A stretch of 37,915 bases of DNA from Selaginella moellendorffii (Eukaryota > Plantae > Lycopodiophyta), in the NCBI RefSeq assembly GCF_000143415.4, contig NW_003314415.1:223407-261321 (forward strand), given 5' to 3'. The position numbers and the translations under genes were made by a program. This document shows positions 2,228-26,435 of this stretch, piece by piece. Numbering within the stretch: the first letter of the stretch is position 1; every line of letters begins with the position of its first letter. The notes below the pieces were generated by a model. It was not told where the DNA came from and did no database searches. It was given only the letters and a program-made list of their open reading frames with translations.

Positions 2228-5200
2228 ATGGCGGGAGAGCAAGATATTGATCCTGATGAGGAGTATGGCGTTAGTGATGATAGCCATGACGATGCGGAAG
2301 AGACTCTTGATGATGTTGTTCTGCGGCAAGGACGCCAGATTTCTGCGGTTCAGAGCGACATAAAGGAGGTTAAGGATTCCGTCAATCTAATTAAGGATTT
2401 CTTGCTTCACATGGACCCTCAAGGATTGAATCGATCTCATGTCCGTGATTACCATTGGTACATCAAGCATGCCAAGGATTATGGTATTATGGAATGGAAA
2501 TCATCACCGGATGTTTGTGATAGTCAAGAGGTTGATTCTTGGTTGGAATTGTGGGAAAGTTGTTGGTCTCACAATCCTTGTGAGGATAAGGTGAAGATAG
2601 ATTTCTTTGTGACGAAGCTTACGGGCCATGCTTCTTCGTGGTGGAAGAACTACATCAAAGCTAATCCGAAGCTGACTTCTTGGACTGATTTGACAAAGGT
2701 TTTCTGCGCTTCGTTTGTCAAGAAGTTTGAAGAGGTTGATCTCGTGAATCAGTTGTTATAGATCCAGCAAGGGACTTTGTCTTTGGATGTGTATGCTCGC
2801 AAGTTCCGTGATCTTTGCCTTAGTCTCACGGGCACCTACAATGAGCTGCTAAAGGTGCAATGTTTTATCAAAGGATTGAGCTCGGTGGATGTGCAGTAGA
2901 AGGTCAAGAAGGATTTTCCAGCAACATTGACTGATGCTATCACTAAGGCTCAAATCTTTTTGCCCAAACCGTCGGTCAACTCGGTCAACGCTGGTCAAAA
3001 GGATGGTCTCCGGGGTGGTCAACGTGATGACCAACCCACCAATACTTCATTTTCAGGGAAGAAACAGCTGTTGCTTCGTCATAGCTCGAAGAGTGGAGAT
3101 GGCAATGAGGCAAAAAGACATCAGTTAGACCAACAAGAGAAGGACAAGGTGGAGGGCAATTGTTTTCGTTGTCACAAGGCTGGACATCATGGCAAGGATT
3201 GTCCTCTTGTGAAGGGATCAAAGAATGCTAAGGTGAATGTGGTGGAATCCATTGTGGATACAGCTCAGGCATCTGCTGTGGTGGCTCTTCCACACCCTGT
3301 GGCAAAAATTCAAGAATCTAAGTCTCGAGTTCGTATCAACTCTGTAGAGATTAATGGTTCTATGTGCAATCAACTTGTGAAGGCCAAAGGGGACATTCAA
3401 GGACATGCTGTTAGTATTCTTTTCGATCCAGGTGCTACACACAACTTTTTGAGCTTTAAGGTGGTGAAGAAACTTGGTTTGCCTGTGGAAAAGAGTTCAG
3501 TAATCTATGAGGTGGTTATGGCAGATGGACATAGCACTCGTATTTACGGTGAATGGGCTCCGAGTGTTCCTTTGACGGTTCAAGGGATTCTCGACCATCC
3601 TTCGTTTCAGGTTATGGATCTTGGTCGCACAGACGTTATTCTTGGGAAGGAATGGTTTTATGACAGGAAGCCAGGGATCGATTGGGAGTGTAATGTTCTG
3701 CGTATCGAAGTTGGTGGCACTATAAAAGAGATTGTCGGGACAGACAATAGTGATACTCCATTGATTAACGCTTTGGAGTTGGTGACATGCATGCATGAGA
3801 TAGCTAATTCTTTTGTGGTGTACCCATTTCTTTCTAATATGATCATGTCTGATTTGGAGTACGTTCGTGGGCATGAGACACGGTGGATTCCATTCAGGAG
3901 GAGTTCCGTGACGTATTTCCGGATGAGTTACCTGATGGTTTGCCTCCAGAACGTGGAATTCAGCATGAGATTGATTTGGTTCCTGGAGCTACTCCTTTTC
4001 AGCGACAACTGACTCGTACTAGTCCCGCTGAAGATGAAGAGATTAATAGGCAGCTTGCTGAATACCTTCGGAAAGGGTGGTTACGGATTAGCAAGTCTCC
4101 TTGGGCTGCTCCAGTGGTGATGGTCAAAAAGAAAGATGGTACATGGCGTCTTTGCGTGAACTACAAGGGATTAAATGATAGGACAGTGAAGAATATGTTC
4201 CCGATCCCTCGTATCGATGATTTGCTTGATCGTCTTCGTGGAGCTTGATATTTTTCGAAGATTGATTTGAGGCAAGGATATCATCAGATTTGTGTCAAGC
4301 CAGAGGATGTTCCAAAAACTGCATTTCGAACAAGGACAGGTCACTACGAGTTTTTAGTGATGCCGTTTGGTTTGACAAATGCTCCTGCAACTTTTCAGAG
4401 ATTGATGAATCACGTTCTACAACCTTACTTGGGAAAGTTTGCAATTGATTATTTTGATGATATCTTAGTATTCAGCTCTTCCGTGGAGGAACATAAGATG
4501 CATGTACGAAGTGTTTTACAGCTTTTGAGGGACAACAAGCTCTACTCGAAATTATCCAAGTGCGAGTTTTTTTAGAGGAGATTGGATATCTCGGGCATTT
4601 GATTTCGGTACATGGAGTGAGAGCTGATCCCACAAAGATTCAGGCCGTGGTTGATTGGCTTATACCTTCCACAGTGCATGATCTCCGTAGTTTCCTTGGT
4701 ATGGTTGGAGTTTTTTGACGATTTGTGAAGGACTTTTCAGGGATAGCAGCCCCTTTAACTGATCTTCTCTAGAATACATCGAAACATGCTATTATTCATG
4801 GTTGGGATGAGAAGTGTGAAGTGGCATTTCAACGTTTGAAGCAATGTTGTATCTCTGCTCCAGTGTTGAAGATTTTTGATCCTGAAAAGCCTCTTGTGGT
4901 CGAGACAGATGCAAGTGACATTGCTATTGGAGCTGTTTTGCTTCAAGTTGGGCATCCTCTTGCGTACATGAGCCATAAGTTTGATGCCACACAGCGGAAT
5001 TGGCCTACTCGAGACAAGGAGTTGTATGCTGTGATTGCTGCTGTGAAGGAATGGCGACATTATCTTTATGGATCGGACTTCCATATGGATTCAGACCATC
5101 AATCTCTCCAATATTTCAGTTGACAAAAGGATCTTTGAGGCCGCCTTGCTCGTTGGCAAGAGTTCCTGTAGGAAATGTCTGTTAAGATCCGGTACAAGCA

Positions 5201-6760
5201 TGGAGGTGACAATAAGGTGGCTGATGCGTTATCCAGGATGGTAAATTCTATCTCATTCGTGAAGTTATCCAGCGATCTCTTGGATGAGCTTAAGGAGTTT
5301 GTTGACTTCGACTCCTTTATCACTGATATTTGCGTGAAGGTTTTGTTGAGGGACGCCTCTACAGATTTGAAGGGTGACAAGTTTGCGTCATTCGAAATAC
5401 GAGATGGAATCCTGGTGAAGAAGGGAGTGTAGTGGTTCCTCGTGTTGACAAACTCATCAAACGGATTTTGGTTGAGTGTCATTATGTGCCAAGTGCTGGG
5501 CATCCGGGGGTATTGAGAACGTATATGTTGGTGAAGAGGCATTTCTTTTGGCCTGGGATGAAGTCAGATGTTGAGAAGTACGTACGTGGTTGCTTGACCT
5601 ACCAGGCGGTCAAAGTTGATCATTAGAAGCTCGCTGGCCTCTATCATCCTTTACATGTACCTGAGAATAAGTGGGATAGCATCTCGATGGACTTTATCAC
5701 TAGTTTGCCCAAAACCTTTCGAGGAAATGATGCTATTTGGGTTGTTGTGGATCGTTTGACAAAGATGGCTCACTTTTTCCCTATGAAGACAATGATAAAA
5801 GCTTCTGAACTTGCTCAGTTGTTTGTAGACCGGTTATTTAGTCTCTATGGTTTGCCAGGTGACATTGTGAGTGATCGAGATCCTAAGTTCACGTCCAAGT
5901 TTTGGCAAACAGTCTTTGAAAAACTAGAGACTAAACTGAGCATGAGTAGTGGTGAGCATCCACAATCTGATGGGCAGATAGAGCGCATGAATCAGCTATT
6001 AGAAGATATGCTACGGTCTTTTGTGGGAAACTTGACTCGATAGGGAGTATGGGAAAAATACTTGCCTTTGCTTCAGTTTGCTCACAATAGCGCTCATCAA
6101 TCGGCTATTGGCATGTCTCCTTTTATGGCGATGTATGGCTATGAGCCTAGGTCTCCTGTGAGTTTGAATTTAGCTTTGGTTCGGGTTCCTCATGCTTGTG
6201 ATTTCCTGGAGGATATGCAAGACAAGCTTGAGTTGGCAAAATTGAACATGAGGCAAACTCAAGAACGAGACAAAAGATTGGCTGATGAGCATCGTCATCA
6301 TCAAGAGTACAAAGTTGGTGACAAGGTTTTCCTTAAGCTGTCGAATGCACAACAATCTCTAAAAGGAAGTGGTAGTGCTAAGTTGTCCCCATGGTATTGT
6401 GGGCCTTGGACAATTTTACAGCGTGTGGGGGATCTTGCATACACTTTGGATTTGCCAGTTAGTTCGAAGATTCATCCAACATTCCATGTGAGCAAACTTA
6501 AAGTGTGTTTGCACTCTGGTGATATCGTGGATCAGTCCATCATCCAGGTTCCAGAGATTGATGCAGAGAAGGCTGGTCCGGCCAATATTCTTGCTCAAAG
6601 ATTGGTGAAAACACACCGGAAAACAACTAGGGAGTTGTTAGTTCAATGGAATGGTTATTCCATGGACGAAGCTACATGGGAAACTGAGGATGACATGAAG
6701 AGAGTGTTTCCGAGTTTTGGTTATGACTTGGATGACATTCCTGAGGAAGGGGAAAATTGA
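2228..6760 (+). pseudogene. Gag-Pol polyprotein with multiple stops and frameshifts
   Basis: Gag KLTGHASSWW, zinc knuckle CFRCHKAGHHGKDC, protease LFDPGATHNF, RT YFDDIL, RH ETDASDIAIGAVL, INT IVSDRDPKFTS...QSDGQIER, chromodomain LLVQWNGYSMDEATWE. Confidence 0.95.
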
Positions 6761-7512: not shown

Positions 7513-9628
7513 AACTGGAACAGTGTGCCCCAAAACTTCCCCGTAAACCTCGAATTTCTATCCGAGATCATCTCTTCAGGAAGACCATGAACCCATATGA
7601 CTTCATGGAAAAAGAGCTTTGCTGCTTATTTCGCATTCACTATTCCCACAGTTGGAATGAAGTGTGCAATCTTTGACAACCGATCCACAACCACCATCAA
7701 AGTATCATAACCCTTAGATTTCGGCAAACAAGTGACGAAATCAAGTGTCACACTTTGAAATGGCTATGCCGGTGTTGGAATGCACTACAACTTTCCAGCT
7801 TGCTTCTCAGTTCTACACTTACATTGCTGGCATATAGGGCAAGAACGAACATAATCCACTACATCACCTTCCATACTAGACCAGAAAAATTCCTTTTTCA
7901 ATGAAGCTAGAGTCTTTGCCATGGATCACTTCCATATGTCTTATGCCATTTTTGCTTATAAAATATAAGCCTATCCCGAACTGAGAAGTGAAACATCGCA
8001 TTAGTGCGACTAGCAACTTTCGCTGCTTCGCTAGTAGGCTCTGCTTCAACAGCCCCGCATGGCATAAGATTGCCTTTGCCAATGGATCACTTCCATATAA
8101 AGCCTAAACATCCTCTAACCAGTCTAAACTAATTGCCAATATTGCCCGGAATTAAGCTTGACGACTCAACGCATCTGGAAAATATTGTCTTTACCAGGTT
8201 TATATATGATTTCAATATCATATCTAGCAAGCTTCTCTTGCCAACGAGCCTGCTTCAGCGTAAGCTTAGGCTGTGTAGCAAAGTAGCTTAGTGTGTTACT
8301 ATCTGTATAAACCTTGATGTGTCCACCCAAGTAATGTCTGTAGTGTTCCAGGGCCAACACTATAGCAAACATTTCTTTCTCATGCGTTAGCCATCTTCAT
8401 TGAGTTTCATCCAATTTCTTGGAATAGAACACAATAGGACAACCATGTCGTCTTAGTGTAACACCAACCACTTTGTCATAATCTTGCTGTAACATGGCAC
8501 CAATAGCATAACCAAATGCATCACAATGCACTTCGAAGGGTTTATCAAGATCTGGGATCTTGAGAATAAGAACTATAGTCAAGATCTCCTTCAACTGTAC
8601 AAAAGCACATTAACAAGCTAGTGTCCAATGAAATGGAATACTACTCTTCGTTAACTCAGTCAACAGAAGAGCAATTCTTGCAAAATTGTGGATAAACTTG
8701 CAATAGTATCCCACCAAACTGAGAAAAGAACAAACATTTGATATAGTGGTCAGGATTTCCCAGGACTTCACCACTTCCACCTTCTTTGGATCGACCTCAA
8801 TTACGCCACCACCAACTATATGTCTGAGAAAGTTTATGCGCAATTGTCCAAAAGTGCATTTACTTTCCTTGACATACAATTGGTGTTCACGCAATTTTTG
8901 AAACACCAGCTCCAAGTGTTTTAAATGATCCTTCAACGTTTTGCTGAAGACTAGAATATTGGCGATATATAGGACAACAAATGTGTCCAAATAATCTCCA
9001 AATATTCTATCCATCATAGTGCTAAACGTTGCTGGAGCATTGCATAACCCAAACGGCATGACAAGAAACTTATAAGATCCATACCGAGTCTTAAAAGTTG
9101 TCTTCTCCACATCCTAATCTGCCACCCGTATCAAATGATACCCGGATCGCAAATCAAGTTGCATAAAATATTTAGCCTTTAAAAGTTGGTCAAATAAGTC
9201 GTCAATGCGAGGCAAAGGATAACTATTTTTAACCCTGATCTTATTGAGTGCCCGATAGTCAATACACATCCTCATGGTTCCATCCTTTCTCATAACAAAA
9301 AGGACTGGTGCTTTATAAGGTGATTTGTTTAGTTGGATATGACTTTTGTCAAAAAGCTCCGTGAATTGTTTCTTGAATTCAGCCATCTTCTTGATGTTCA
9401 AACGATATGGAGCTTTTGTAGGTGGTTTAGAACCCGAAATAACCTCAATCTGATGATCAACCTCATGGCTGGGAGGTAGCCCTGGTGGCAAATCCTTCAA
9501 GAAGATATCCTGATTCTCCAATATCTTCTTTGGTACAGGATCAACCCTGTTGCCGATTCGAATTGAGTCACCAACACCCTCAGCTTCCATCACTTGAACC
9601 CAAAAGGTTTAACATCCCCTCTTAGCTG
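7513..9628 (-). mobile_element. Degraded Ty3/Gypsy pol fragment (RT-RH-INT), copy B
   Basis: [47 protein letters not shown] and integrase MISDRNSRFTGKFW. Fused directly to the 3' end of RLK1 at ~9628. Confidence 0.92.
7937..8069. mobile_element. ~130-bp insertion with 11-bp terminal inverted repeats (MITE or mini-LTR-like)
   Basis: TCTTATGCCAT (7939-7949) and ATGGCATAAGA (8059-8069). Flanked by a ~23-bp direct repeat TTTGCC(A)ATGGATCACTTCCATAT. Confidence 0.55.
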
Positions 9629-11293
9629 GTCCAGGAGCTTGTCGTCAATAAGCTCAATGACGTTGCCACTGTGAAACATGCTCAACGCGGTTTCGCCCAG
9701 GAAGCACAGTTGTGAGGAGGATGAGGAGGAAGAGGAGGATGGAGGATGGAACTGGATGGTGCGCCTGGAGCTGACGAGCTCGAGCAGCACGATTCCAAAG
9801 CTGTAAACGTCAGTCTTGTCCATGACTTTGGTGTGGAGCCACTCGGGTGCCATGTATCCGGGAGTTCCTCGCATGACAGTCACCACTTGGCTCTTTCCCC
9901 GCTCGGCAAGCTTGCTCAGGCCAAAGTCGGAGATTCTGGCTCGTAAGTTCTCGTCCAGGAGGATGTTTTGAGGTTTGATATCCAGGTGAAGAACTTGCTC
10001 CCAGCATCCTTCATGGAGGTATGTGAGTCCTCGAGCAACATCTATCGCGATTGAGTGTCTCTGATTCCAGTTTAACAGCAGATTTGCTGATTCGCCACCT
10101 TTGTCATCATCGTTCTTGGTGAAGATCCACTTGTCCAGTGATCCATTGGGCATGAACTCGTAGACAAGCAATGCAGCTGGTCCCTGGATGCAAAATCCCC
10201 GGAGCTTTACCAGGTTGAAGTGGTGAATGCTGCCAATGGACATTACCTCGGCCTTGAACTGCGAGTGTCCTTTCGACGAGCCTTGGATCTCTACGTCCAT
10301 CTTCTTCACAGCAACGAGGCTCCCATCCGCAAGCTCTCCTTTGAAGACGGATCCAAATCCTCCAGCTCCAAGCATGAGCTCGGGATCAAAGTTTCTAGTT
10401 GCCATCTTCAAGTCGTGATAGCTAAACTGGTGCAGAAGTATCTCATCGAGCCTCATTCCTTCGATGAGCGCTTGCTTTTCCATGCGCCTCCTCCGAGATC
10501 TTCTCCACTTCCTGGTTGCTACGAAGATTACGACGCTAAGCACCACCCCGGCCACAGCGCTTGCTACCCCAGCGATCACTCCCTCATAATTCTTTTTGCT
10601 TCGAATGGACTGTGGAAGATTACTATCAATGACATTCCAGGTGATATTTCTCAAGATTCCAATGCCTGGATCATACCCAAGCTGCCTCCACACTTGCTCG
10701 TTCACAGCCACAGCGTTTGGAGCACAGGGCTCCGTGAACGAATGATCCCTGAGACACCCGGCTGGGGAGTAGCATTCAGCTACCATTCTAGCGACCGCAG
10801 TCCGTCCGTTTGGAGCTAAAACTTGGATGTTTTTCGAGCACAAGCTTCGGTCTTGGGTATACCATCCAGTGGCCAGCGCTGCCATGGGTTCCATATTCCA
10901 TTGCGAGGACGTGCACGGCCTGAGAGACCCCGGATTTGAGAGGTTGAAGCTTGTGGCATAGAGGACGGCATTGTTGGTCCCTTGTAAATTTGGAGAGCAG
11001 GCGAAAGTCCTGTAAGCCAGGCCTGGGACGCAGCAATTCGGGCAGTCTGGAACGATGGTGTCATTGAAAATGAAGCCGGAGATGGGCTTGCAAACTTCAG
11101 AATCGCTGAGATATGGCTCGGATTGATTGCTCGACAGGTAGCAGGATGAATTGCGGAGTGAACGGTTGCCGCTGAGCATGGGCTCCGGGAAACAAAGAGA
11201 TCCATTCGGGCAGTCGCTTAACGAAGAACATACCTGTTGTTGGGCTTGCGAGTGGAAGCTCCTGGTGCTACATAGCACGATCATGAAGCACAT
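9590..11293 (-). CDS. Kiwellin-ectodomain receptor-like kinase type 1 (RLK1), non-RD, C-terminally truncated
   Basis: Hydrophobic N-terminus. Kiwellin/ripening-related motifs [49 protein letters not shown] and [26 protein letters not shown] followed by RKWRR. Kinase [25 protein letters not shown]. Subdomain XI is replaced by Gypsy sequence after ~9629. The ancestral ATG (11312) is +1 out of frame; in-frame ATGs are at 11353 and 11293. Confidence 0.85.
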
Positions 11294-11349
11294 GAGAATT
11301 CGACACCTCCATAGTTCAGTAAATACCACTGTTCTTGGACACCTGGAAA

Positions 11350-11586
11350 CCATAGAAATCAGAGACTATGAGATCATGTCTCTCTCGTTGTTTCGGCCCA
11401 CAGACTTAAAGTTTGGCAGCTGGCTGCAGCTATCTTTCAGTGTCTTGGTTTTTCTGGGCTGTAGACGAAAAGAGGAATTCCTCCCAGGGACCCGCAATGC
11501 TTTAACAAGCCAAGAGGTTCGATCTTGAGACCGCAAAGACTTCAGACTTTTTATAGAGCTTTTAAACCAGTTTACCCGTGACAGCC
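11350..11586. promoter_or_regulatory. Shared divergent 5' module between type 1 and type 2 RLKs (copy 1 of 3)
   Basis: Direct copy at ~12222-12502 and inverted copy at ~15525-15770. It lies between opposed start codons. Confidence 0.6.
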
Positions 11587-12135: not shown

Positions 12136-12502
12136 CGCAAAAGACCAATGCTGATGTTGGTATGAGTTCAGTTGAAAAACCATTTGCTGAAATCTTTATG
12201 TTATGACAACAGTCGCGGTTGTCATAGAAAATCAGAGACTATGACATCACGTAAGTCTCATTAGTGTCTCTCTCGTCGTTTCGGCCCACAGACTCAAAGT
12301 TTGCAGCTGGCTGCAGGTATCTTTCAGTGTCATGGTTTTCTGGGCTGGCAGACTAAAAGAAAAATTCCTCCCACGGACCCTCGCAATGCTTTAACAAGTC
12401 AAAAGCTTGACAAGTCTAGCTCCACATGAGACGGCAAAAGACTTCAGACTTTTTCTAGAGCTTTTAAACCATTTTACCCGCGACACGTTTGCAATTCCAG
12501 CC

Positions 12503-14299
12503 ATGGATCATCGCAGCAGCACTTTCTTCGCGCTCGCGATGATCTCACTCGTCAGCGCCACCGCGCAGCATTTCTCCTCCTCTTGCGGCACGAGATGCGA
12601 CTCTAGGCGCGATTGTTCTGGCGGCCTCGTTTGCAATCCTGTTAGCAAGACCTGCGATGGCGATCCAGGAGCTAGCACCCTTTCCTGCCCAATTCCCGGC
12701 TGCGAGCCCGCCCAGAGCTTCATCTACTCGAATGCCACCGCCCACGATCCCGAGTACTGCGTCGACAACAACACCTACCAGTTCTTCAATTGCTCGCCTA
12801 AAGAGCAGTCTCTCAACTTCGCGGCTCTCTACTACACCGAGCTGGAGGGAATCCCCACGGCATGCAATCGGTCCACGCCTTACAAGAACTCGGAGCTCCT
12901 GGCAAACATGGCCACCGGATGGTTTGCCAGTGGATCCTCGTGCTTCAAAGAGATTGTGATCACGGCAGAGAATGGGATGAGCGTCACGGCGACGGTGGTG
13001 GACATTTGTGCATCAACGATCGGGTGTAGCCCATTGACTGGATACTACGAGCCGTGCACGCCCAGATCGCTGGGAGGGACGAGAGGTGTGTGGGAAGCGC
13101 TGGGGCAGACGTATTTTGATAATGTGTTGCAAGTCACTTGGAAGTGGAAGGGCGAGGATTCGAAAAAACGCACTCTTTTCATTGCACTGGTTTCTAGTGG
13201 AGCGCTCGTTGCCTTGGCGCTCTTAGGCATTTTGTGGTGGAAGGTCGTGAGACGGTCCAATGCCGCCAAGAACAAGCTCCATCTGGGGGATCTCACGGAT
13301 GCCCCGCGGCAAATCAGGTACCAAGAGTTGTATCGAGCGACCAAGGGATTCCAGAGCAAGGTGGGAGAGGGAGGGTTTGGGACTGTGTTCAAGGGGACGC
13401 TGCCCAGCGGAGAGATTGTGGCGGTCAAGAGGATTGGCGGTGGATCGCGGCAGGGGGACAAGCAATTTAAAGCGGAGGTGATGTCGATTGGCAGCATCCA
13501 TCACCTCAATCTCGTCAAGCTGGTTGGATTTTGCCTGCATTCTCGCCACAACTTACTCATCTACGAGTTCCTCGCCAATGGCTCGCTGGATAGATGGATT
13601 TTTGCCAAGGACAAGTATCTGCCCTGGGCAACCAGGCTTTCCATCGCGCTCGACGTCGCTCGAGGGCTTGCGTATCTCCACGATGGATGCCGCGAGAAGG
13701 TACTCCATCTAGACATCAAGCCCCAGAACATCCTCCTGGATGAGAAGATGAATGCCAAAATCGCCGACTTTGGATTCTCCAAGCTCATTGACAAGGACAA
13801 AACTCATGTCGTGACAGTCATGCGGGGTACGGTGGGATACATGGCTCCCGAGTGGCTCCACTCTCGTGTGACGGACAAGACGGACGTCTATAGCTTTGGG
13901 ATCGTCCTCCTGGAGCTCGTCTGCTGCATGAAGGCCGTGGAGTATCCCTCGGACTCACAGATGGACGTTGGGTTCCTCGCCCAGACTGCTTTCAACAAGC
14001 TCGACAGTGGAAACGCCATGGACTTGGTGGACGATCGGCTGGTCAAAGCCGAGGACGGTGGTGGTTTATCCTTGAGTGGCTTCGAGAACATCATCCGGAT
14101 CGGGCTATGGTGTGCACAGGAGGATCCTTTGCAGCGACCAACGATGTCTGTGGTGGTGAAGATGCTCGAGGGTGCCATGGATGTGTTGGCGTTCCCTCAG
14201 CTGGAGAGACCCGCTGCACAGGATTCATCGCTCCTGGTGAGCAGCAGCGAGAGCTCGGGATTGCAAATCTCCATCTCGGTCTCGGACTTGGCTCGCTAA
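12503..14299 (+). CDS. Intact kissper-kiwellin receptor-like kinase type 2 (RLK2), non-RD SD-2b-like kinase, 598 aa, intronless
   Basis: Signal peptide MDHRSSTFFALAMISLVSATA. Six-Cys kissper SCGTRCDSRRDCSGGLVC...TCDGDP...SC. Kiwellin core NCSP, MATGWF, CFKEIVITAENGMSVTATVVDIC, GC, EPC, VWEALG, VTW. TM LFIALVSSGALVALALLGILWW. Complete kinase [45 protein letters not shown]. Confidence 0.93.
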   Translation: MDHRSSTFFALAMISLVSATAQHFSSSCGTRCDSRRDCSGGLVCNPVSKTCDGDPGASTLSCPIPGCEPAQSFIYSNATAHDPEYCVDNNTYQFFNCSPKEQSLNFAALYYTELEGIPTACNRSTPYKNSELLANMATGWFASGSSCFKEIVITAENGMSVTATVVDICASTIGCSPLTGYYEPCTPRSLGGTRGVWEALGQTYFDNVLQVTWKWKGEDSKKRTLFIALVSSGALVALALLGILWWKVVRRSNAAKNKLHLGDLTDAPRQIRYQELYRATKGFQSKVGEGGFGTVFKGTLPSGEIVAVKRIGGGSRQGDKQFKAEVMSIGSIHHLNLVKLVGFCLHSRHNLLIYEFLANGSLDRWIFAKDKYLPWATRLSIALDVARGLAYLHDGCREKVLHLDIKPQNILLDEKMNAKIADFGFSKLIDKDKTHVVTVMRGTVGYMAPEWLHSRVTDKTDVYSFGIVLLELVCCMKAVEYPSDSQMDVGFLAQTAFNKLDSGNAMDLVDDRLVKAEDGGGLSLSGFENIIRIGLWCAQEDPLQRPTMSVVVKMLEGAMDVLAFPQLERPAAQDSSLLVSSSESSGLQISISVSDLAR

Positions 14300-14672
14300 G
14301 TAGCTTATTAACTTATTAAGCAGGTCAATCGAACGGCAATTTACATATATTTTTAGAATCCTCGATGAGAAACCAAAAGGTCTTGAGGTGGACGATATTC
14401 ATTCAGTAGTTTATAAGCAGTTTCGATGATCTGTTTTGCTGAACTCCTCCAGATCGCCACACGGCTGCCAAACCTCACAGGAAGAATTGTAATTGTCTAA
14501 AAATCACCAACCTGCTGCTTCTCTTTCTTTTTTGCGAAAGACCAATGCTGATTTCAGAATCAGAACAATGAATTTTAATTATAGAATTCCTGCTGCTAAG
14601 AGATAAAAATAGGTGAGCTGTTTATTAGTCTCAATAGCAAACCAAATCTTATGATATGCAAGCATTTCCAAT

Positions 14673-15290
14673 CTAGCTGCCATAGTCTTGGATCTGGCAG
14701 TTCGGATCAATATTGGCATCCCATGATTCAGCATCCTGTAGCTCATGCTCAATATTATGGTAGTTACTCTCAGATCCCACGTAGAAGTCCATGTTGCATT
14801 CATTGTTCTTCTCCTTGTCTTTCTTGCAGGCATCATCCACCCGAACACATCCATTGTGTTGCCTGCCGTTGGGAAGCGCTAAGCCTTGGAGCAGATCTAT
14901 CTTGAGATGTGATCCAAAGGGATACTTCCCTTCATCTGGAACAGCAATAGACACGTAAAGCTGCAAGTCGTTCTCTCGACTGCCCTTGGGACCATCAGTC
15001 ACGAAGTAGCAGGTGCAATCGTTGTCTTGACAATTCACGTAGCGCCCGTCCTTCAACCTTCCAGCACCCTCAACGTGGATTTTTGAACTGAAACCGCCAC
15101 AGACGGAAGCTATCGCGTTGCCATCGCAATCCTTGATTTCTGTGTTTGAGGCCTCGTTGCCGCATAGAACACTCTCCTCTACAGTCCAGTAGTACGTGAA
15201 ACTCTCTCTGGCTGCCTCCACTGAGAATCCCAGAGCCATGCAAGCGAAAAAGAGCACAAGAGAAGCGGAAGATCGATGATTTTTAGCCAT
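14673..15290 (-). CDS. Secreted Cys-rich 3D-domain (MltA/DPBB-like) protein, 205 aa, intronless
   Basis: Signal peptide LVLFFACMALGFSVEA. Motifs FTYYW..EE, EGAGRLKDG, SIAVPD...PFGS.L.I..L.G..LPNG..HNGCVRVDD and MDFYVG resemble microbial 3D-domain proteins. Ten Cys in the mature chain and a TATA box upstream. Confidence 0.72.
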   Translation of the reverse strand: MAKNHRSSASLVLFFACMALGFSVEAARESFTYYWTVEESVLCGNEASNTEIKDCDGNAIASVCGGFSSKIHVEGAGRLKDGRYVNCQDNDCTCYFVTDGPKGSRENDLQLYVSIAVPDEGKYPFGSHLKIDLLQGLALPNGRQHNGCVRVDDACKKDKEKNNECNMDFYVGSESNYHNIEHELQDAESWDANIDPNCQIQDYGS

Positions 15291-15345
15291 GAATGAATGC
15301 AGCGCTGCTGGCTGTATAATTCTTGCATGACCTCGGAGCACTAGC

Positions 15346-15352
15346 TTTTATA
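15346..15352 (-). promoter_or_regulatory. TATA box of the 3D-domain gene
   Basis: CCTATAAAAG on the minus strand, ~55 bp upstream of the ATG at 15290. Confidence 0.6.
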
Positions 15353-15467
15353 GGAGCCAGGCATCGCCGTGCCATGTGGTGTGTGTATACCGCGTCTGTT
15401 GTGGGACCACCAGCCAGGGCAATCGTTGTTTTCACCCTCGATGTGGCCTCGTTGGTGCTCCTCTGGA

Positions 15468-15524
15468 TACGTGAAACTCTCTCCACTGAGAATCCTCGAA
15501 GAAAGTGCTGCTGCGATGATCCAT
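15468..15524 (-). pseudogene. RLK2 start (MDHRSSTFF) fused to a fragment of the 3D gene 5' coding region
   Basis: 15497-15524 is the reverse complement of the RLK2 start. 15468-15495 matches ~15193-15230 with a small deletion. Confidence 0.7.
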
Positions 15525-15805
15525 GGCTGGAATTGCAAACGTAAACTGGTTTAAAAGCTCTAGAAAGTCTTTTGTGGCATGTGGAGCTAGACTTGTCAGG
15601 CTTTTGACTTGTTCAAGCATTGCGAGGGTCCGGGGAGAAATTGCTCTTTTAGTCTGCCAGCCCAGAAGAACCTTGACACTGAAAGATACCTGCAGCCAGC
15701 TGCCAAACTTGAAGTCTGTGGGCCGAAGAGACACTAATGAGACTTACATGATCTCTGATTTTCTATGGTTTCCAGGTGCCCAAGAACAGTGGTATTTACT
15801 AAACT

Positions 15806-17933
15806 ATGGAGGTGGCGATTCTCATGTGCTTCATGATCGTGCTATGTAGCACCCTCGCAAGCCCAACAACAGGTATGTTCTTCGTTAAGCGACTGCCCGA
15901 ATGGATCTCTTTGTTTCCCGGAGCCCATGCTCAGCGGCAACCATTCACTCCGCAATTCATCCTGCTACCTATCGAGCAATCAATCCGAGCCATATCTCAG
16001 CGATTCCGAAGCCCATCTCCATAGTCAATTTCACTGCCACCATCGCTCCAGATTGCCCGAATTGCTGCGTCCCAGGCCTGGCTTACAGGACTTTCACCTG
16101 CTCTCCAAATTTACAAGGGACCAACAATGTTCTTCAGTAACTCCACTCTCAAGTCGTAAAGGCTGGTTCCTTGGTACTTGGAGCTTCTCCCATCATCTTT
16201 CTGTTGGCTCTACTCAAGACCATGGCTTGAGATAAAAGTCTGCGGCGAGTTTTTCTACAAAGTACCTCCACGTGAAGACCCCCCCTCTTGCTCTTTGTTG
16301 GTTTCGTGCACGACGAAACTTTCTGTCGCGGCTCTTTGCTGGTTTCGTGCCTTAACGAAACTCAGCCCAGTTTTGGTTTTCTGGTGAATAAAAGCCCTGT
16401 TTAACAAGGGACCAACAATGCCGTCCTCTATGTCACAAGCTTCAACCTCTCAAATCCGGGGTTTCTCAGGCCGTGCACGTCCTCGCAATGGAATATGGAA
16501 CCCATGGCAGCGCTGGCCACTGGATGGTATACCCAAGACCGAAGCTTGTGCTCGAAAAACATCCAAGTTTTAGCTCCAAACGGACGGACTGCGGTCGCTA
16601 GAATGGTGGCTGAATGCTACTCCCCAGGCGCGTGTCTCAGGGATCATTCGTTCACGGAGCCCTGTGCTCCAAACGCTGTGGCTGCGAACGAGCAAGTGTG
16701 GAGGCAGCTTGGGTATGATCCAGGCATTGGAATCTTGAGAAATATCACCTGGAATGTCATTGATAGTAATCTTCCACAATCCATTCGAAGCAAAAAGAAT
16801 TATCAGGGAGTGATCTCTGGGGTAGCAAGCGCTGTGGCCGGGGTGGTGCTTAGCGTCGTAATCTTCGTAGCAACCAGGAAGTGGAGAAGATCTCGGAGGA
16901 GGCGCATGGAAAAGCAAGCGCTCATCGAAGGAATGAGGCTCGATGAGATACTTCCGCACCAGTTTAGCTATCACGACTTGAAGATGGCAACTAGAAACTT
17001 TGATCCCGAGCTCACGCTTGGAGCTGGAGGATTTGGATCCGTCTTCAAAGGAGAGCTTGCGGATGGGAGCCTCGTTGCTGTGAAGAAGATGGACGTAGAA
17101 ATCCAAGGCTCGTCGAAAGGACACTCGCAGTTCAAGGCCGAGGTAATGTCCATTGGCAGCATTCACCACTTCAACCTGGTAAAGCTCCGGGGATTTTGCA
17201 TCCAGGGACCAGCTGCATTGCTTGTCTACGAGTTCATACCCAATGGATCACTGGACAAGTGGATCTTCATCAAGAACGATGATGACAAAGGTGGCGGATC
17301 AGCAAACCTGATGTTGAACTGGACCAGAGACACTCAATACCTCCATGAAGGATGCCGGGAGCAAGTTCTTCACCTGGATATCAAACCTCAAAACATCCTC
17401 CTGGACGAGAACTTACGAGCCAGAATCTCCGACTTTGGCCTGAGCAAGCTTGCCGAGCGGGGAAAGAGGCAAGTGGTGACTGTCATGCGAGGAACTCCCG
17501 GATACATGGCACCCGAGTGGCTCCACACCAAAGTCACGGATAAGACCGACGTTTACAGCTTTGGAATCGTGCTGCTCGAGCTCGTCAGCTCCAAGCGCAC
17601 CATCCAGTTCCATCCTCCATCCTCCTCTTCCTCCTCATCCTCCTCACAACCGCGCTTCCTGGGCGAAACCGCGCTGAGCATGTTTCACAGTGCAACGTCG
17701 TCGAGCTTATTGACGACAAGCTCCTGGACAATGATCTCGACAGCACTAGCAGTGGCTTAGAGCTCAAGGATGTCGAGAGGTACGTGAAAATCGGACTGTG
17801 GTGCATCCAACTCGAGGCAGCAATCCGGCCCTCTATGAGAAACGTCTTGGATATGCTCGAAGGTAACACAGACGTTCTTGACTTGCCACCACCTTCAAGT
17901 GATGGTAGCTCCAGAAGCTTGAGCTTGCTGTGA
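15806..17933 (+). pseudogene. Kiwellin-RLK type 1 pseudogene (RLK3), inverted paralog of RLK1
   Basis: Near-identical to the reverse complement of 9629-11312. Lesions: 11-bp deletion in the signal peptide, 274-bp insertion, ~30-bp deletion in kinase VIa (NWTRDTQYLHE) and a -1 frameshift at ~17692. It keeps the original start MEVAILM and the C-terminal tail LWCIQ..RPSM...SLSLL*. Confidence 0.9.
16130..16403. mobile_element. 274-bp insertion in the RLK3 ectodomain
   Basis: Absent from RLK1. Flanked by a 17-bp direct repeat ACAAGGGACCAACAATG (16113-16129 and 16404-16420). Can be read as TGTT...AACA (16128-16406). Contains AATAAA and a duplicated GTTTCG..CGAAAC hairpin. Confidence 0.75.
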
Positions 17934-23181: not shown

Positions 23182-25281
23182 ATTTCCCCCCCCTAACAAA
23201 GTCCTTATCCCAAGGACAAGTTGTACCGGTGATCACCCTTTTTGGGGAACCTTGCTCAAGTTCTTGGTCCACCTTCCACAACTGTATACATCAAGGAGGC
23301 ATTAAGCCCGTCACTCTAAGATAGTACACTTTTCAACTAGCTAATATAAAATACTAGATGAATTTTCACCTTAGTTGGCAGCTGCACCTGATAAACCGCT
23401 TTAGCAATGTGCTCCAGCACTTCATATGGATCAATATATCAATGGGAAAGTTTATCACTCTTCCCTATCCGTAAAGGCACCAAGGTGTTCCACCGTTTAC
23501 TTGATGGAAAGATCATTTGCATAAAGATGAGATCACCCACCTTATATTCCCGGAATTAGCGATGCTTATTAGCAAATTTCTCCTTTCTATCTTGAGTTGC
23601 CTGCAAATTCTGTTTGCACACCACCAGAATCTCATCAAGTTCTGTGGCTAGATCAGTTGCCTCGGAATCAAGCTTATGTTAAATGTCTTACTCAAATGCA
23701 ATCTCAATTCCACCGTTGTTCGGGGATGCCTTCCAAACATGACAAAGTAAGGACTTAACTTAGTTCTATTGTGTTGGCTATTGTTGTAAGAAAATTGCAC
23801 TAATAGAAGATATAGATCCCATTGTCCTTGCCTTTGACCAATGCTACAATGTAACATATCTTCCACCACCTGATCACACGCTTAGTTTGCCCATTTATTT
23901 GAGGATGATCTCCACTTAAGAGTTTCAAAGTCACTTGTATAGCCTTTGCAAAGCTTTTCCAAAATCCACTATTGAACTTTGAATCTCGATCATTAATGAT
24001 GTCCTCCGCCAAACCAAAATCAGGAAAAACCTTCTCCAAATAAACCGTAGCCAAGTCTGAGGTAGTGACAGTCTTCTGAAGAGCCAAAAACTGCACATAC
24101 TTTGTCAACCGATCCACTATGACCTATACTTGCTCCTTTTGCCTTTGTGTTCATAGCAAACAAGTGATGAAGTCTATAAAGATACTACACCAATAGCTCT
24201 GAGGAATAGGTAAAGGTTGCAAAAGTCCCCCTGACTTCTCCCGTGTCACCTTAACCTGCTGACAGAGCTTGCATGATTTACAATACTTGAGGATATCAAC
24301 CTTTATATTCCTCCAATAAAATTTGCACTTAATCAACTCTTCCCCCCAAAATGACTGGCCTTTAGACGATCATAATAGTGGAATAAAACTTGAGTAATTA
24401 ATGCATCCATCTATGGCAAACATACACGGCCATTGTAGTAAAGAATCCCATCCACCAATGAGAAAAAGGCTTCTATTTGATCTCTCAAAGAGGTCACCTC
24501 AGTATTTTGAGCCTAAGCATGCTCAACCAACTGCCCAAACTTGCTAGCCACCTTACTCAAATGATGACAAAATCGTGTTTGTAACATCATCACATGACGA
24601 ACACGAGATAAAGCATCTGCCACCACATTTAATTTTCCCGGATGATGCTCAATAGAAAATTCCCCAAACTCCATAAGTTTGACCATCCAATGAGCTTGCC
24701 TAGTGTTCAACTCCTTTTGTGTGAAAAGATATACAAGCGGTTTGTGATATGTCAACACCACGAACACTACACCATAAAGATAGTGTTGCCACATCCGCAA
24801 AGCATGAACAATAGAGAGTAACTCTTGCTCATATGTGCAATAGCGTTGCTCCGTAGAATTCAAAGTATGACTCTCATATGCAATAGGTTGTCCTTCTTGC
24901 ATGAGAACTCCTCCCAGTGCATAACCACTCGCATTGCATGTCACTTCGTAAGGTTTTGATGGATCAATACTGCAAAGTATTAGAGTTTCACTTAACAATT
25001 GTTTCAGCGCCACAAAACTCTCCTCTTATGGCTTCTTCCACTCGAATGGCACATTCTTGCGTAACAATCACGTCAAAGGAATAGCCACCTTTGCAAAATT
25101 TTGCTGGAAACATCAGTAGTAACTAGCATACCAAGAAAACTATGCAACTCAGCCACTGTATTCGGTGTAGGCCAATTTTCCACCACAGCCACTTTCCTTG
25201 GATCCGTCTTAACACTCTTAGATGTCACAATATACCCTAAATATTCCCCCTCCAACTTTGCAAACTCACATTTGCTCTTCT

Positions 25282-26435
25282 TGTAGTGCACGTGGTTTTG
25301 ACCCTTTATCCTATGGTGATTTACCATAGGATAACACCACGAAGCGGAACCTAAACCCTCTATGTGCCACATGTCATATGCCACGTGTCACATGCCACAT
25401 GTCCATGCCACATGTCCATAGGAACCCGAGGTTCAGGGCCTTGGGCCACTGAACGAAGGAACAGTGCCAAACTCCCAAGCATGGAGCCAAGGAGTGATGG
25501 AACTGAACTACAGAGCAACTCCCAAGCATAAAGCCCAAGGAGCGAAGGGACAGGAGCCCGGAGCGACTTGGAATAGTCCTAGAGTAACCAGCATCCCAAT
25601 GCCAGGACCAGCACGCAAAATGAAGCCAAACGGAGTTTGGCGCTATTTCGGCATACCGGTGGCCTAACGTGAGGATATGGGTACTCCACCAACTAGCATA
25701 GAATGGAACTTGGGCTTAGACCCAAGCCGGACGTAGAACAAGGACAGGCATGCAAGCGGGAGCTAGACTATGCCTCAGGTTGGTCGGCCATGCCTGACCT
25801 ACCCACTATCCCTATTAAACATTTGGAACCCCCCAAAGCCCCCCCCCCCCCCCCCCCCTTGAGGAACACACGCTTTGGGCTTTCACCCCAAGCCTCCCTT
25901 AGTATCAGGAGTTAGTCTCTGGGACAAGCTCGAAACTTATTAAATATGGAATGTCCCTAGATTGTGAATTTGGACACGGGACGAACACCATTGTGTTCAA
26001 GCCGATCTCTACATTCCGTAAATGTGCCAAATGAACAAATCTGGACACTTTCCATAAATAACATTTGGGACCGAAATGAGACTAACACAAAGGGCATGAT
26101 AACGAGGGTGTTTGGCAAACACGGTAAGCTATCATCCAGCGATATTGAGGGACCAATCTCAATATGCGAGGGTTTTTGTCAATCCAGTGCAAGACAAAGC
26201 AAAAGAGAACTAAGAGCCAGGCCGAGTATGCTCAGCTAGTAATACATAGGAGTTCCTACCTTATGTCCATCTGGCTAAGTACAGGTGCTAAACCCAGTAA
26301 ACTAACACTTGAACAAGAGGGGCTGATAAAGGGAACCAGCAATACCGACCTCCTGCCATCGTGGCAGTAAGGTAAGAGTGTCCGTAAGGACTGGTCGACA
26401 GGTAACTTTCGATATCCGAAGTCACATGCACGACA
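25282..26435. mobile_element. 1154-bp solo LTR (family E) inserted into RT
   Basis: TGTAGTGCACGTG...CACATGCACGACA imperfect terminal inverted repeat with perfect 5-bp TSD CTTCT (25277-25281 and 26436-26440). Removing it restores LYVKKSKCEF. Confidence 0.92.

What the first reader, a model, noticed from the sequence alone, without database searches (positions are those of the whole stretch)
14673..15290. Intact secreted 3D/MltA-like protein of microbial appearance in a plant immune-like cluster (HGT candidate)
Seen: an intronless open ORF with a TATA box, signal peptide, ten Cys and Asp residues at the three 3D-like positions (AVPD, VDD, MDF). From recall, the TYYW..E / EG.G.L.DG / G..LP.G..H.GC...DD / DF.V pattern belongs to bacterial and early-diverging fungal 3D-domain proteins related to MltA lytic transglycosylases, and I do not know it from seed plants. 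Inference: a horizontally acquired peptidoglycan- or glycan-active protein, which could release elicitors for the neighbouring RLKs.
Basis: partly seen in the sequence, partly recalled or inferred. Interest (0 to 1): 0.78.

Follow-up and report, generated by a model that had tools for sequence, protein, structure and literature searches.

The report
Fungal-type MltA-like secreted protein, Selaginella
This spikemoss gene encodes a small secreted protein built like the bacterial cell-wall-cutting enzyme MltA; its nearest relatives are in early-diverging fungi rather than plants, so it was probably gained by horizontal transfer, and it was later duplicated beside receptor-kinase genes.

Summary
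Window 14673-15290 (minus strand) is an intact, intronless 205-aa ORF in Selaginella moellendorffii scaffold GL377719.1. It has a signal-peptide-like N-terminus, 10 Cys in the mature part and a TATA motif about 55 nt upstream.

- **Family.** Pfam and NCBIfam do not hit the protein itself. An exhaustive profile search finds 459 cluster representatives, and 22 of 60 aligned relatives hit PF06725 (3D). The family profile hits YuiC (E 4e-5).
- **Fold.** A pLDDT 91.6 model matches MltA lytic transglycosylases over 155 residues (Z 10). Kiwellin scores only Z 4.1.
- **Residues.** The catalytic Asp (D168 = MltA D308) and the sugar-binding Asp (D153 = D297) are kept. The first canonical Asp column is not.
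- **Relatives.** Named nearest relatives are all early-diverging fungi. Myxococcota form the outgroup. The only other plant hit is the lycophyte Diphasiastrum.
- **Tree.** Lycophytes sit near Entomophthoromycotina. The AU test rejects "fungi excluding plants" only marginally (p 0.046). A single lycophyte clade is not rejected (p 0.44).
- **Copies.** The genome has three intact copies and one pseudogene. Three of the four loci lie next to kiwellin-ectodomain receptor kinases.
- **Untested.** Enzyme activity and any elicitor link to the kinases.

The scan reported paralogues of this gene before, on other pieces of this genome (s1-380557, s1-398862).

The parts
14673..15290 (-). Intronless CDS of a 205-aa secreted compact MltA/3D-like protein (stop codon included)
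   Evidence: called as a gene on GL377719.1; family assignment
15213..15290 (-). Signal-peptide coding part (aa 1-26, predicted cleavage after VEA)
   Evidence: Read from the translation. Helix 8-20 in the AF2 model. Inferred only; no signal-peptide predictor was available.
15346..15353 (-). TATA-like motif TATAAAAG about 55 nt upstream of the ATG
   Evidence: conserved in paralogue loci L002 and L004
14787..14789 (-). Codon of D168 (MDF), equivalent to the catalytic Asp of MltA (D308) and YuiC (D162)
   Evidence: Profile alignment to YuiC. Residue equivalences from PMC4499186. Asp in 152/160 relatives.
14832..14834 (-). [quoted passage not shown]
   Evidence: invariant in 160/160 relatives
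14934..14936 (-). Codon of D119 (AVPD). It lies one column after the canonical first Asp (MltA D261); the canonical column is Pro here.
14796..14828 (-). Cys-bracketed loop C155-C165 between the two conserved Asp. In this copy it carries a Lys-rich insertion that the paralogues lack.
   Evidence: In YuiC and MltA this loop contacts the -1 sugar.
12407..14299 (+). Neighbour: kiwellin-ectodomain receptor kinase, convergent with the gene (context, not part of the gene)
   Evidence: PF24300 1.9e-19, Pkinase 4.6e-46
16495..17760 (+). Neighbour: kinase ORF with a partial kiwellin domain, divergent from the gene (context)
9590..11353 (-). Neighbour: second kiwellin-ectodomain receptor kinase (context)

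Best explanation
The gene encodes a small, disulfide-rich secreted protein. It is a compact homologue of the bacterial lytic transglycosylase MltA: a double-psi beta-barrel '3D' core plus a reduced MltA-type insert. It belongs to a subfamily found in Myxococcota, early-diverging fungi and, among plants, only lycophytes so far.

Most likely a lycophyte ancestor, or Selaginella itself, acquired it from an early-diverging fungus of the Zoopagomycota type. It then became a resident plant gene with a promoter, kept under long-term purifying selection and transcribed. It was duplicated together with kiwellin-ectodomain receptor-kinase genes.

By inference from the conserved catalytic Asp (D168), the sugar-binding Asp (D153) and the MltA-like fold, it most probably binds and cleaves beta-1,4-linked GlcNAc-containing glycans in the apoplast. 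Candidate substrates are bacterial peptidoglycan or fungal chitin, cleaved by the single-Asp lytic-transglycosylase mechanism that yields 1,6-anhydro products. That would give it an antimicrobial or fragment-releasing role.

Shown here: homology, fold, residue conservation, genomic integration and copy history. Inferred: direction of transfer, enzyme activity, substrate and role.
For: Identity and fold
- 459 representatives at E<=1e-3; best non-Selaginella hit 4e-34.
- 22/60 relatives hit PF06725.
- The family profile hits YuiC at 4e-5 across the D2/D3 motifs.
- The Myxococcota-branch profile hits MltA/LtgG at 1.2e-4. Its EGSG..L.DG motif aligns only weakly (far below significance) with MltA's QGSGR..L.DG.
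- AF2 with the 60-sequence alignment gives pLDDT 91.6.
- VIA-align: MltA entries Z 8-10 over 150-158 residues, YuiC Z 7.3, kiwellin Z 4.1.
- Foldseek's top 14 matches are all MltA-family.
- The Atlas look-up agrees.

Residues
- D153 is invariant and D168 is Asp in 152/160. T32, Y34, H145 and G147 are conserved.
- Residue roles come from PMC4499186.

Resident plant gene
- The window is S. moellendorffii GL377719.1.
- Paralogues lie on scaffolds of 1.9 and 4.3 Mb among ordinary plant genes.
- dN/dS against the old paralogue is about 0.3 at dS about 0.8.
- Contigs of four runs from four studies cover the ORF and 3' end with 0 mismatches and leave the upstream intergenic DNA uncovered. That pattern looks like RNA.

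Origin
- All named close relatives are early-diverging fungi.
- The outgroup clade is Myxococcota.
- In the careful ML tree Selaginella (100/100) is sister (81/89) to an Entomophthoromycotina + Diphasiastrum group, inside the eukaryote-type clade (92/94).
- Forcing the fungi to exclude the plants costs 38 lnL units, p-AU 0.046.
Against: - Pfam 3D and NCBIfam models do not hit the protein itself, even at E<=1.
- The canonical first Asp column is Pro.
- The loop after D153 contacts the -1 sugar in MltA and YuiC. Here it is replaced by a Cys-bracketed loop of variable length, so substrate or activity may differ.
- dN/dS between this copy and its closest intact paralogue is about 1.0-1.1, and a fourth copy is already a pseudogene. 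The recent copies may therefore be under relaxed constraint.
- The AU rejection of 'plants outside fungi' is marginal (0.046). Backbone supports are moderate.
- Only about 45 of the relatives could be given an organism name, and only the top 150 of 459 hits were listed. Absence from other plants is not proven.
- The run type 'RNA' is the tool's guess.
Confidence: 0.62

Rival explanations
1. Same family, but no longer an enzyme. The protein would be a glycan-binding or decoy protein, or a gene drifting towards loss, rather than an active lytic transglycosylase.
For: - dN/dS is about 1 between the window copy and P0002.
- The sister copy L004 is a pseudogene.
- The canonical first Asp is missing and the -1-site loop is remodelled.
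- The Diphasiastrum relative has Gln in place of the catalytic Asp.
Against: - All three intact Selaginella copies keep D153, D168, T32, H145 and all ten mature Cys.
- dN/dS is about 0.3 over the deep duplication.
- The ORF is intact and apparently transcribed.
Confidence: 0.22
2. Not a fungus-to-plant transfer. Either the gene is an old eukaryotic gene lost from nearly all plants, or the transfer ran from a lycophyte to fungi, or both lineages acquired it independently from bacteria.
For: - AU rejection of fungi-excluding-plants is only marginal (p 0.046).
- Lycophyte monophyly is not rejected (p 0.44). That allows presence in the lycophyte ancestor more than 350 Myr ago.
- Backbone supports are moderate.
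Against: - The eukaryote-type clade is one clade against Myxococcota (92/94). This argues against independent bacterial acquisitions.
- The fungi hold many divergent paralogues across Zoopagomycota, Mucoromycota and Glomeromycotina. Plants contribute two tips nested among them.
- No other plant appeared in the word-index searches or among the named relatives of the exhaustive search.
Confidence: 0.13
3. A divergent plant-native DPBB protein, derived from the kiwellin domains of the flanking receptor kinases.
For: Kiwellin is also a double-psi beta-barrel, and three kiwellin-RLK genes flank the ORF. Kiwellin appears in the fold lists.
Against: - Kiwellin scores Z 4.1 over 91 residues, against Z 10 over 155 for MltA.
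- The profile-profile comparison with the neighbouring RLK gives probability 0.1%.
- There is no PF24300 hit.
- Sequence relatives at E down to 1e-34 are fungal 3D proteins.
Confidence: 0.02
4. Contaminating fungal or bacterial DNA, or an assembly chimera.
For: Microbial-type gene, intronless.
Against: - It lies 374 bp from a plant RLK on one side and about 1.2 kb from another on the other side, on the same contig.
- There are four loci on scaffolds up to 4.3 Mb among plant genes.
- Independent runs from several studies hold the exact sequence.
Confidence: 0.01

Closest known systems
MltA (membrane-bound lytic murein transglycosylase A, GH102; PDB 2ae0, 2pi8, 2pnw, 7esj)
   Same: Best structural match: Z 8.5-10 with 155-158 aligned residues spanning model residues 24-197. 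Same DPBB core with an inserted sub-domain. The catalytic Asp (D308 = D168) and D297 (= D153) are conserved. The EG.G..L.DG motif resembles MltA's QGSGR..L.DG.
   Different: - About half the size (about 180 aa mature against about 340).
- Not a lipoprotein; it has a eukaryotic signal peptide and 10 Cys.
- The D261 column is not Asp.
- The loop after D297 is replaced.
- No direct sequence hit.
- The host has no sacculus of its own in the secretory space.
YuiC / Sps '3D' domain proteins of Firmicutes (PF06725; PDB 4wjt, 4wli, 4wlk)
   Same: The family profile hits YuiC at E 4e-5 over the D2-D3 segment, with Z 7.3. YuiC is a minimal MltA that converts penta-GlcNAc to a 1,6-anhydro product (PMC4499186). 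This shows that such cores can act on chitin-type chains.
   Different: YuiC lacks the insert sub-domain that this protein retains, and only 90 residues align. YuiC is a domain-swapped dimer and has all three Asp.
Uncharacterised '3D domain-containing proteins' of early-diverging fungi (e.g. Conidiobolus coronatus KXN72822.1, Entomophthora muscae KAJ9077750.1, Dimargaris cristalligena RKP37053.1)
   Same: Closest sequence relatives outside Selaginella: E 4e-34 to 1e-20 and 30-35% identity over the whole mature protein. Same length class, the same HNGC..DD and ND motifs, and secreted.
   Different: They are fungal. None is characterised, and I found no paper on them. Selaginella adds four lineage-specific Cys (C43, C65, C155, C165) and has Pro for the fungal Asn at the first-Asp column.
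Kiwellin / barwin / expansin-type plant DPBB proteins
   Same: Same broad double-psi beta-barrel superfold. Kiwellin domains sit in the neighbouring genes.
   Different: Only Z 3.5-4.1 over about 80-90 residues, and no sequence or profile similarity. Not the same family.

Membership tests
MltA/3D lytic transglycosylase superfamily (PF06725 3D; GH102) | Match to the Pfam 3D model above its threshold | tested here: not met
   No Pfam hit for the window protein even at E<=1. 22 of 60 aligned relatives do hit PF06725, best 1.7e-15, so the link is transitive.
MltA/3D lytic transglycosylase superfamily (PF06725 3D; GH102) | Profile-level sequence homology to solved 3D/MltA proteins | tested here: met
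   Family profile against YuiC, E 4.1e-5. Myxococcota-branch profile against LtgG/MltA, E 1.2e-4 to 0.016.
MltA/3D lytic transglycosylase superfamily (PF06725 3D; GH102) | MltA-type fold: DPBB core with inserted sub-domain | tested here: met
   Model pLDDT 91.6. MltA Z 10.0/9.9/9.1 with 155-158 residues aligned. Foldseek E 7e-5, probability 1.00.
MltA/3D lytic transglycosylase superfamily (PF06725 3D; GH102) | Catalytic Asp (MltA D308 / YuiC D162) | tested here: met
   D168 aligns to it. Asp in 152/160 relatives.
MltA/3D lytic transglycosylase superfamily (PF06725 3D; GH102) | Second Asp (MltA D297 / YuiC D151), ligand of the -2 GlcNAc | tested here: met
   D153, invariant in 160/160.
MltA/3D lytic transglycosylase superfamily (PF06725 3D; GH102) | First Asp (MltA D261 / YuiC D129) | tested here: not met
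   The column is Asp in 58/60 Myxococcota, Asn in 75/96 eukaryote-type relatives and Pro in Selaginella. An Asp follows one column later, and that column is Gly in paralogue P0004.
MltA/3D lytic transglycosylase superfamily (PF06725 3D; GH102) | Thr that orients the catalytic Asp (MltA T99 / YuiC T91) | tested here: inconclusive
   T32 of TYYW is Thr in 136/160 relatives. Its equivalence to T99 was not shown by any alignment printed here.
MltA/3D lytic transglycosylase superfamily (PF06725 3D; GH102) | Lytic transglycosylase activity (1,6-anhydro product) | not testable with these tools
   Needs a biochemical assay.
Kiwellin (PF24300) | Sequence or profile match to kiwellin | tested here: not met
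   No Pfam hit. hhalign against the neighbouring kiwellin-RLK gives probability 0.1%. Structural Z only 4.1.
Horizontally acquired gene (fungus to lycophyte) | Integrated in the recipient genome, not contamination | tested here: met
   Flanked by plant RLKs on the same contig. Four loci lie on large scaffolds among plant genes.
Horizontally acquired gene (fungus to lycophyte) | Recipient sequences nested within the donor clade | tested here: inconclusive
   ML tree: sister to Entomophthoromycotina with 81/89 support. AU test against fungi-excluding-plants gives p 0.046, delta lnL 38, which is marginal.
Horizontally acquired gene (fungus to lycophyte) | Absent from the recipient's other relatives (other land plants and algae) | tested here: inconclusive
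   Only Selaginella and Diphasiastrum were found among the named hits. Only the top 150 of 459 hits are listed, and most are unnamed metagenome or Logan proteins.

The most novel reading that the evidence does not exclude
The secreted MltA-like protein and the kiwellin-ectodomain receptor kinases form a functional unit that has been duplicated together; three of four copies lie beside such kinases. In this reading the foreign enzyme either generates peptidoglycan or chitin fragments that the kinases (or their partners) sense, or it is itself guarded or bound by the kiwellin ectodomains. That would be a horizontally acquired enzyme wired into a lycophyte-specific immune receptor module.
Probability: 0.1. 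Interest if true: 0.85.

Novelty: new member of a known kind. Interest (0 to 1): 0.55.

Why it matters
Lytic transglycosylases of the MltA type are considered bacterial enzymes. An intact copy, conserved over a deep duplication and apparently transcribed, in a vascular plant, with fungal nearest kin, adds a clean candidate to the short list of fungus-to-plant gene transfers.

It also points to an uncharacterised eukaryotic branch of the MltA family, present in many insect-pathogenic and mycoparasitic early-diverging fungi, whose substrate is unknown. The candidates are peptidoglycan and chitin.

Its repeated placement beside kiwellin-ectodomain receptor kinases gives a testable link between an acquired wall-degrading enzyme and surface immune receptors in an early-diverging vascular plant lineage.

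I found no paper that mentions these genes. In NCBI they are only 'hypothetical protein' models.

Tried and rejected
- **Direct family scans.** Pfam and NCBIfam gave nothing at E<=1. A single-sequence PDB search gave only noise.
- **Shallow-alignment fold.** The first AF2 run on a 4-sequence alignment failed (pLDDT 37) and was discarded. The 60-sequence alignment gave the model used.
- **Genome scan.** It was redone with a Myxococcota-only alignment.
- **More lycophyte kin.** A word-index search with the Diphasiastrum protein returned only itself.
- **Diphasiastrum contig.** It has few ORFs and only a weak copia-type Gag trace, so its plant origin is plausible but unproven.
- **Kiwellin-paralogue idea.** Rejected.
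- **Contamination.** Rejected for Selaginella.
- **Plastid peptidoglycan remodelling.** Considered, but set aside on inference alone. The protein has a secretory-type N-terminus and ten Cys, not a transit peptide.
- **Contig end at 15212.** All laid contigs stop there, 78 nt short of the ATG. This is best explained as a de Bruijn branch point. The first paralogue-distinguishing bases are at CDS nt 109-110, and 109-30 = 79 corresponds to 15212. It is not evidence for a different 5' end.
- **Literature.** Searches for fungal 3D proteins, the SELMODRAFT ids and Selaginella lytic transglycosylases found nothing relevant. PMC10378081 concerns PF03330 hevein chimeras, not this gene.
- **Complex prediction.** Not run. 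I make no binding claim, and gene adjacency alone is not reason enough.
- **Operator rules.** No spliced model was needed.

Full report
**What is there**

The minus strand of window 14673-15290 carries an uninterrupted 205-codon ORF that starts at the ATG at 15290. The product begins with a basic stretch, a hydrophobic core and ...VEA|AR, which reads as a secretory signal. The mature part has ten Cys. A TATAAAAG motif lies on the same strand at 15346-15353 and is conserved in two paralogue loci.

The window is Selaginella moellendorffii assembly GCA_000143415.2, scaffold GL377719.1, where this ORF is a called gene. The flanking ORFs at 9590-11353 (-), 12407-14299 (+) and 16495-17760 (+) are protein kinases with kiwellin (PF24300) ectodomains. 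The rest of the window holds LTR-retroelement pieces.

**What family it belongs to**

Pfam-A and NCBIfam give no hit for the protein, even at E<=1. The word-index search found only S. moellendorffii paralogues.

An exhaustive profile search of 1.84 billion representatives found 459 proteins at E<=1e-3 and 115 at E<=1e-10. The best hit outside Selaginella scored 4e-34.
- Of 60 aligned relatives, 22 hit PF06725 (3D domain), best 1.7e-15.
- The family profile hits the solved 3D protein YuiC at E 4e-5 across the segment that holds the second and third Asp.
- A profile of the bacterial branch hits MltA-family structures at 1.2e-4 to 0.016. It also aligns the family's EGSG..L.DG motif with MltA's QGSGR..L.DG, but that stretch is far below significance.

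With the 60-sequence alignment, AlphaFold2 gives a confident model (pLDDT 91.6, pTM 0.82). The earlier 4-sequence run had failed.
- The exhaustive structural comparison ranks six MltA-family entries first, Z 7.5-10.0 with 150-158 residues aligned over model residues 23-197.
- YuiC follows at Z 7.3 over 90 residues.
- Generic DPBB proteins follow at Z about 4, including kiwellin at 4.1.
- Foldseek agrees: its top 14 matches are all MltA-family, best E 7e-5.
- The ESM Atlas look-up had pointed the same way.

So the protein is a compact, two-part MltA homologue, not only a bare 3D core.

**Active-site residues**

The YuiC paper equates YuiC D162 with MltA D308 (catalytic) and D151 with D297 (binds the N-acetyl nitrogen of the -2 sugar). 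It also equates D129 with D261 and names a Thr (T91/T99) that orients the catalytic Asp (PMC4499186).

From the HMMER alignment to YuiC and column counts over 160 relatives:
- D168 (MDF) is the catalytic position. It is Asp in 152/160.
- D153 is the D297 position. It is invariant.
- The D261 column is Asp in 58/60 of the bacterial branch and Asn in 75/96 of the eukaryote-type relatives. It is Pro in Selaginella. The Asp of AVPD lies one column later, and that column is Gly in paralogue P0004.
- T32 of TYYW is strongly conserved, but I could not show that it corresponds to T99.
- The loop after D153 contacts the -1 sugar in YuiC and MltA. In Selaginella it is a Cys-bracketed loop of variable length, and the window copy has a Lys-rich insertion there.

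The core catalytic machinery is therefore kept, while part of the substrate site has been remodelled.

**Who else has it**

Every close relative that carries an organism name is an early-diverging fungus:
- Entomophthora muscae
- Conidiobolus coronatus
- Neoconidiobolus thromboides
- Basidiobolus meristosporus
- three Dimargaris species
- Tieghemiomyces parasiticus
- Geosiphon pyriformis
- Parasitella parasitica
- Spinellus fusiger
- Bifiguratus adelaidae

A second clade of 60 unnamed metagenome proteins belongs to Myxococcota (Kofleriaceae, Nannocystaceae, Polyangiaceae, Haliangiales). A genome scan with an alignment of 11 of its members returned 180 confirmed loci, and nearly all of the 80 kept are labelled that way.

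The only other plant is the lycophyte Diphasiastrum complanatum (O6H91_Y164800).
- Its homologous part is a single exon on an unplaced 65-kb contig.
- A degenerate second copy lies 3 kb upstream.
- It has Gln in place of the catalytic Asp.
- Whether that contig is truly plant DNA could not be settled.

**Phylogeny**

A careful ML tree (63 rows, LG+C20 PMSF) separates Myxococcota from a single eukaryote-type clade (92/94).
- Selaginella (100/100) is sister, at 81/89, to a group of Entomophthoromycotina sequences that also contains Diphasiastrum. The 160-row quick tree is compatible with this.
- AU test 1: holding the four lycophyte rows together costs 3.8 lnL units, p 0.44. One acquisition in a lycophyte ancestor is therefore allowed.
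- AU test 2: holding the 21 named fungi together, with plants and Myxococcota outside, costs 38 lnL units, p 0.046. That is a marginal rejection.

The data favour a fungus-to-lycophyte transfer without proving it.

**History inside Selaginella**

There are four loci.
- The window copy is intact.
- SELMODRAFT_416208 (79% identical) is intact. It lies next to a head-to-head pair of kinases, one of which has a recorded kiwellin hit.
- SELMODRAFT_405120 (58% identical) is intact and lies among ordinary plant genes on a 4.3-Mb scaffold.
- SELMODRAFT_423500 lies next to a kiwellin kinase. It is a pseudogene with a frameshift near residue 100, an in-frame stop and a 7-residue deletion. The annotated 132-aa model hides these behind a false intron.

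Nei-Gojobori dN/dS is about 0.3 (dS about 0.8) between the old paralogue and the others. It is about 1.0-1.1 (dS 0.09) between the window copy and 416208. That means long-term constraint, followed by either relaxed or diversifying evolution in the recently duplicated kinase-linked copies.

**Expression**

Contigs of four public runs from four studies match the ORF and its 3' side exactly. In one run the matching pieces cover only 14603-15212. None of the four covers 15217-15822, so the pattern is that of transcripts, although the run type is the tool's guess.

All contigs stop at 15212. That position is exactly 30 nt before the first bases that distinguish this copy from 416208. It is therefore an assembly-graph break, which also implies that a paralogue is present in the same runs. 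The 5' end of the transcript remains unconfirmed.

**Most likely mechanism**

The protein is probably secreted to the apoplast and folded with up to five disulfides. There it would bind beta-1,4 GlcNAc-containing chains and cleave them by the single-Asp lytic-transglycosylase route.
- MltA cleaves peptidoglycan and binds chitohexaose (PDB entry 2pi8).
- YuiC turned penta-GlcNAc into a 1,6-anhydro product.

Both bacterial peptidoglycan and fungal chitin are therefore plausible substrates. All of this is inference. The main rival is a non-catalytic binder or a decaying copy.

**Novelty**

The genes exist only as 'hypothetical protein' models. No paper in the searchable library mentions them or the fungal subfamily. 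Two earlier follow-ups of this scan, on other pieces of the same genome, reached the same reading for paralogues. I confirmed the main points independently here. I file the gene as a new member of a known enzyme family with an unusual host and a probable horizontal origin.

Noticed in passing
L004:6001-6577 (S. moellendorffii GL377627.1, SELMODRAFT_423500): The near-identical sister copy is a pseudogene: frameshift near residue 100, an in-frame stop and a 7-residue deletion. The public 132-aa gene model skips the damage with a false intron. It also lies next to a kiwellin-RLK.
   Followed up: yes
L002:5421-10594 (GL377594.1): The paralogue SELMODRAFT_416208 sits beside a head-to-head pair of kinases, one with a recorded kiwellin hit, as in the window. 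However, the MltA-like gene has the opposite orientation relative to the pair, so the block was duplicated and then rearranged.
   Followed up: partly
window 15468-15495: A short remnant of the gene's own 5' coding segment lies about 180-200 bp upstream of its ATG: two exact pieces of 16 and 15 nt, copies of 15193-15208 and 15216-15230. It is also visible upstream of the L004 copy and is probably a scar of an earlier tandem duplication.
   Followed up: partly
L001:7007-7388 and 10001-10588 (Diphasiastrum complanatum MU832886.1): Diphasiastrum has a single-exon homologue plus a fragmentary second copy 3 kb upstream (about 63% identity). The annotated gene model adds two tiny exons 4 and 15 kb downstream that look spurious. 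The catalytic Asp is replaced by Gln.
   Followed up: partly
window 2927-4012, 6062-6760, 8610-9593, 24513-26891: Pieces of Ty3/gypsy-type (chromodomain) LTR retroelements flank the kinase cluster: aspartyl protease, chromo/SH3, reverse transcriptase and RNase H.
   Followed up: no
window 16112-16404: Contigs of two runs join 16112 to 16404, skipping 291 nt with ends AC..TA, just upstream of the third kinase ORF. Depth here is very high in one run, which suggests a repeat or an abundant transcript.
   Followed up: no
Relatives P0017 (1212 aa), P0038 (697 aa), P0112 (687 aa): Some eukaryote-type relatives carry the MltA-like module inside much longer proteins. These fusions were not examined.
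   Followed up: no
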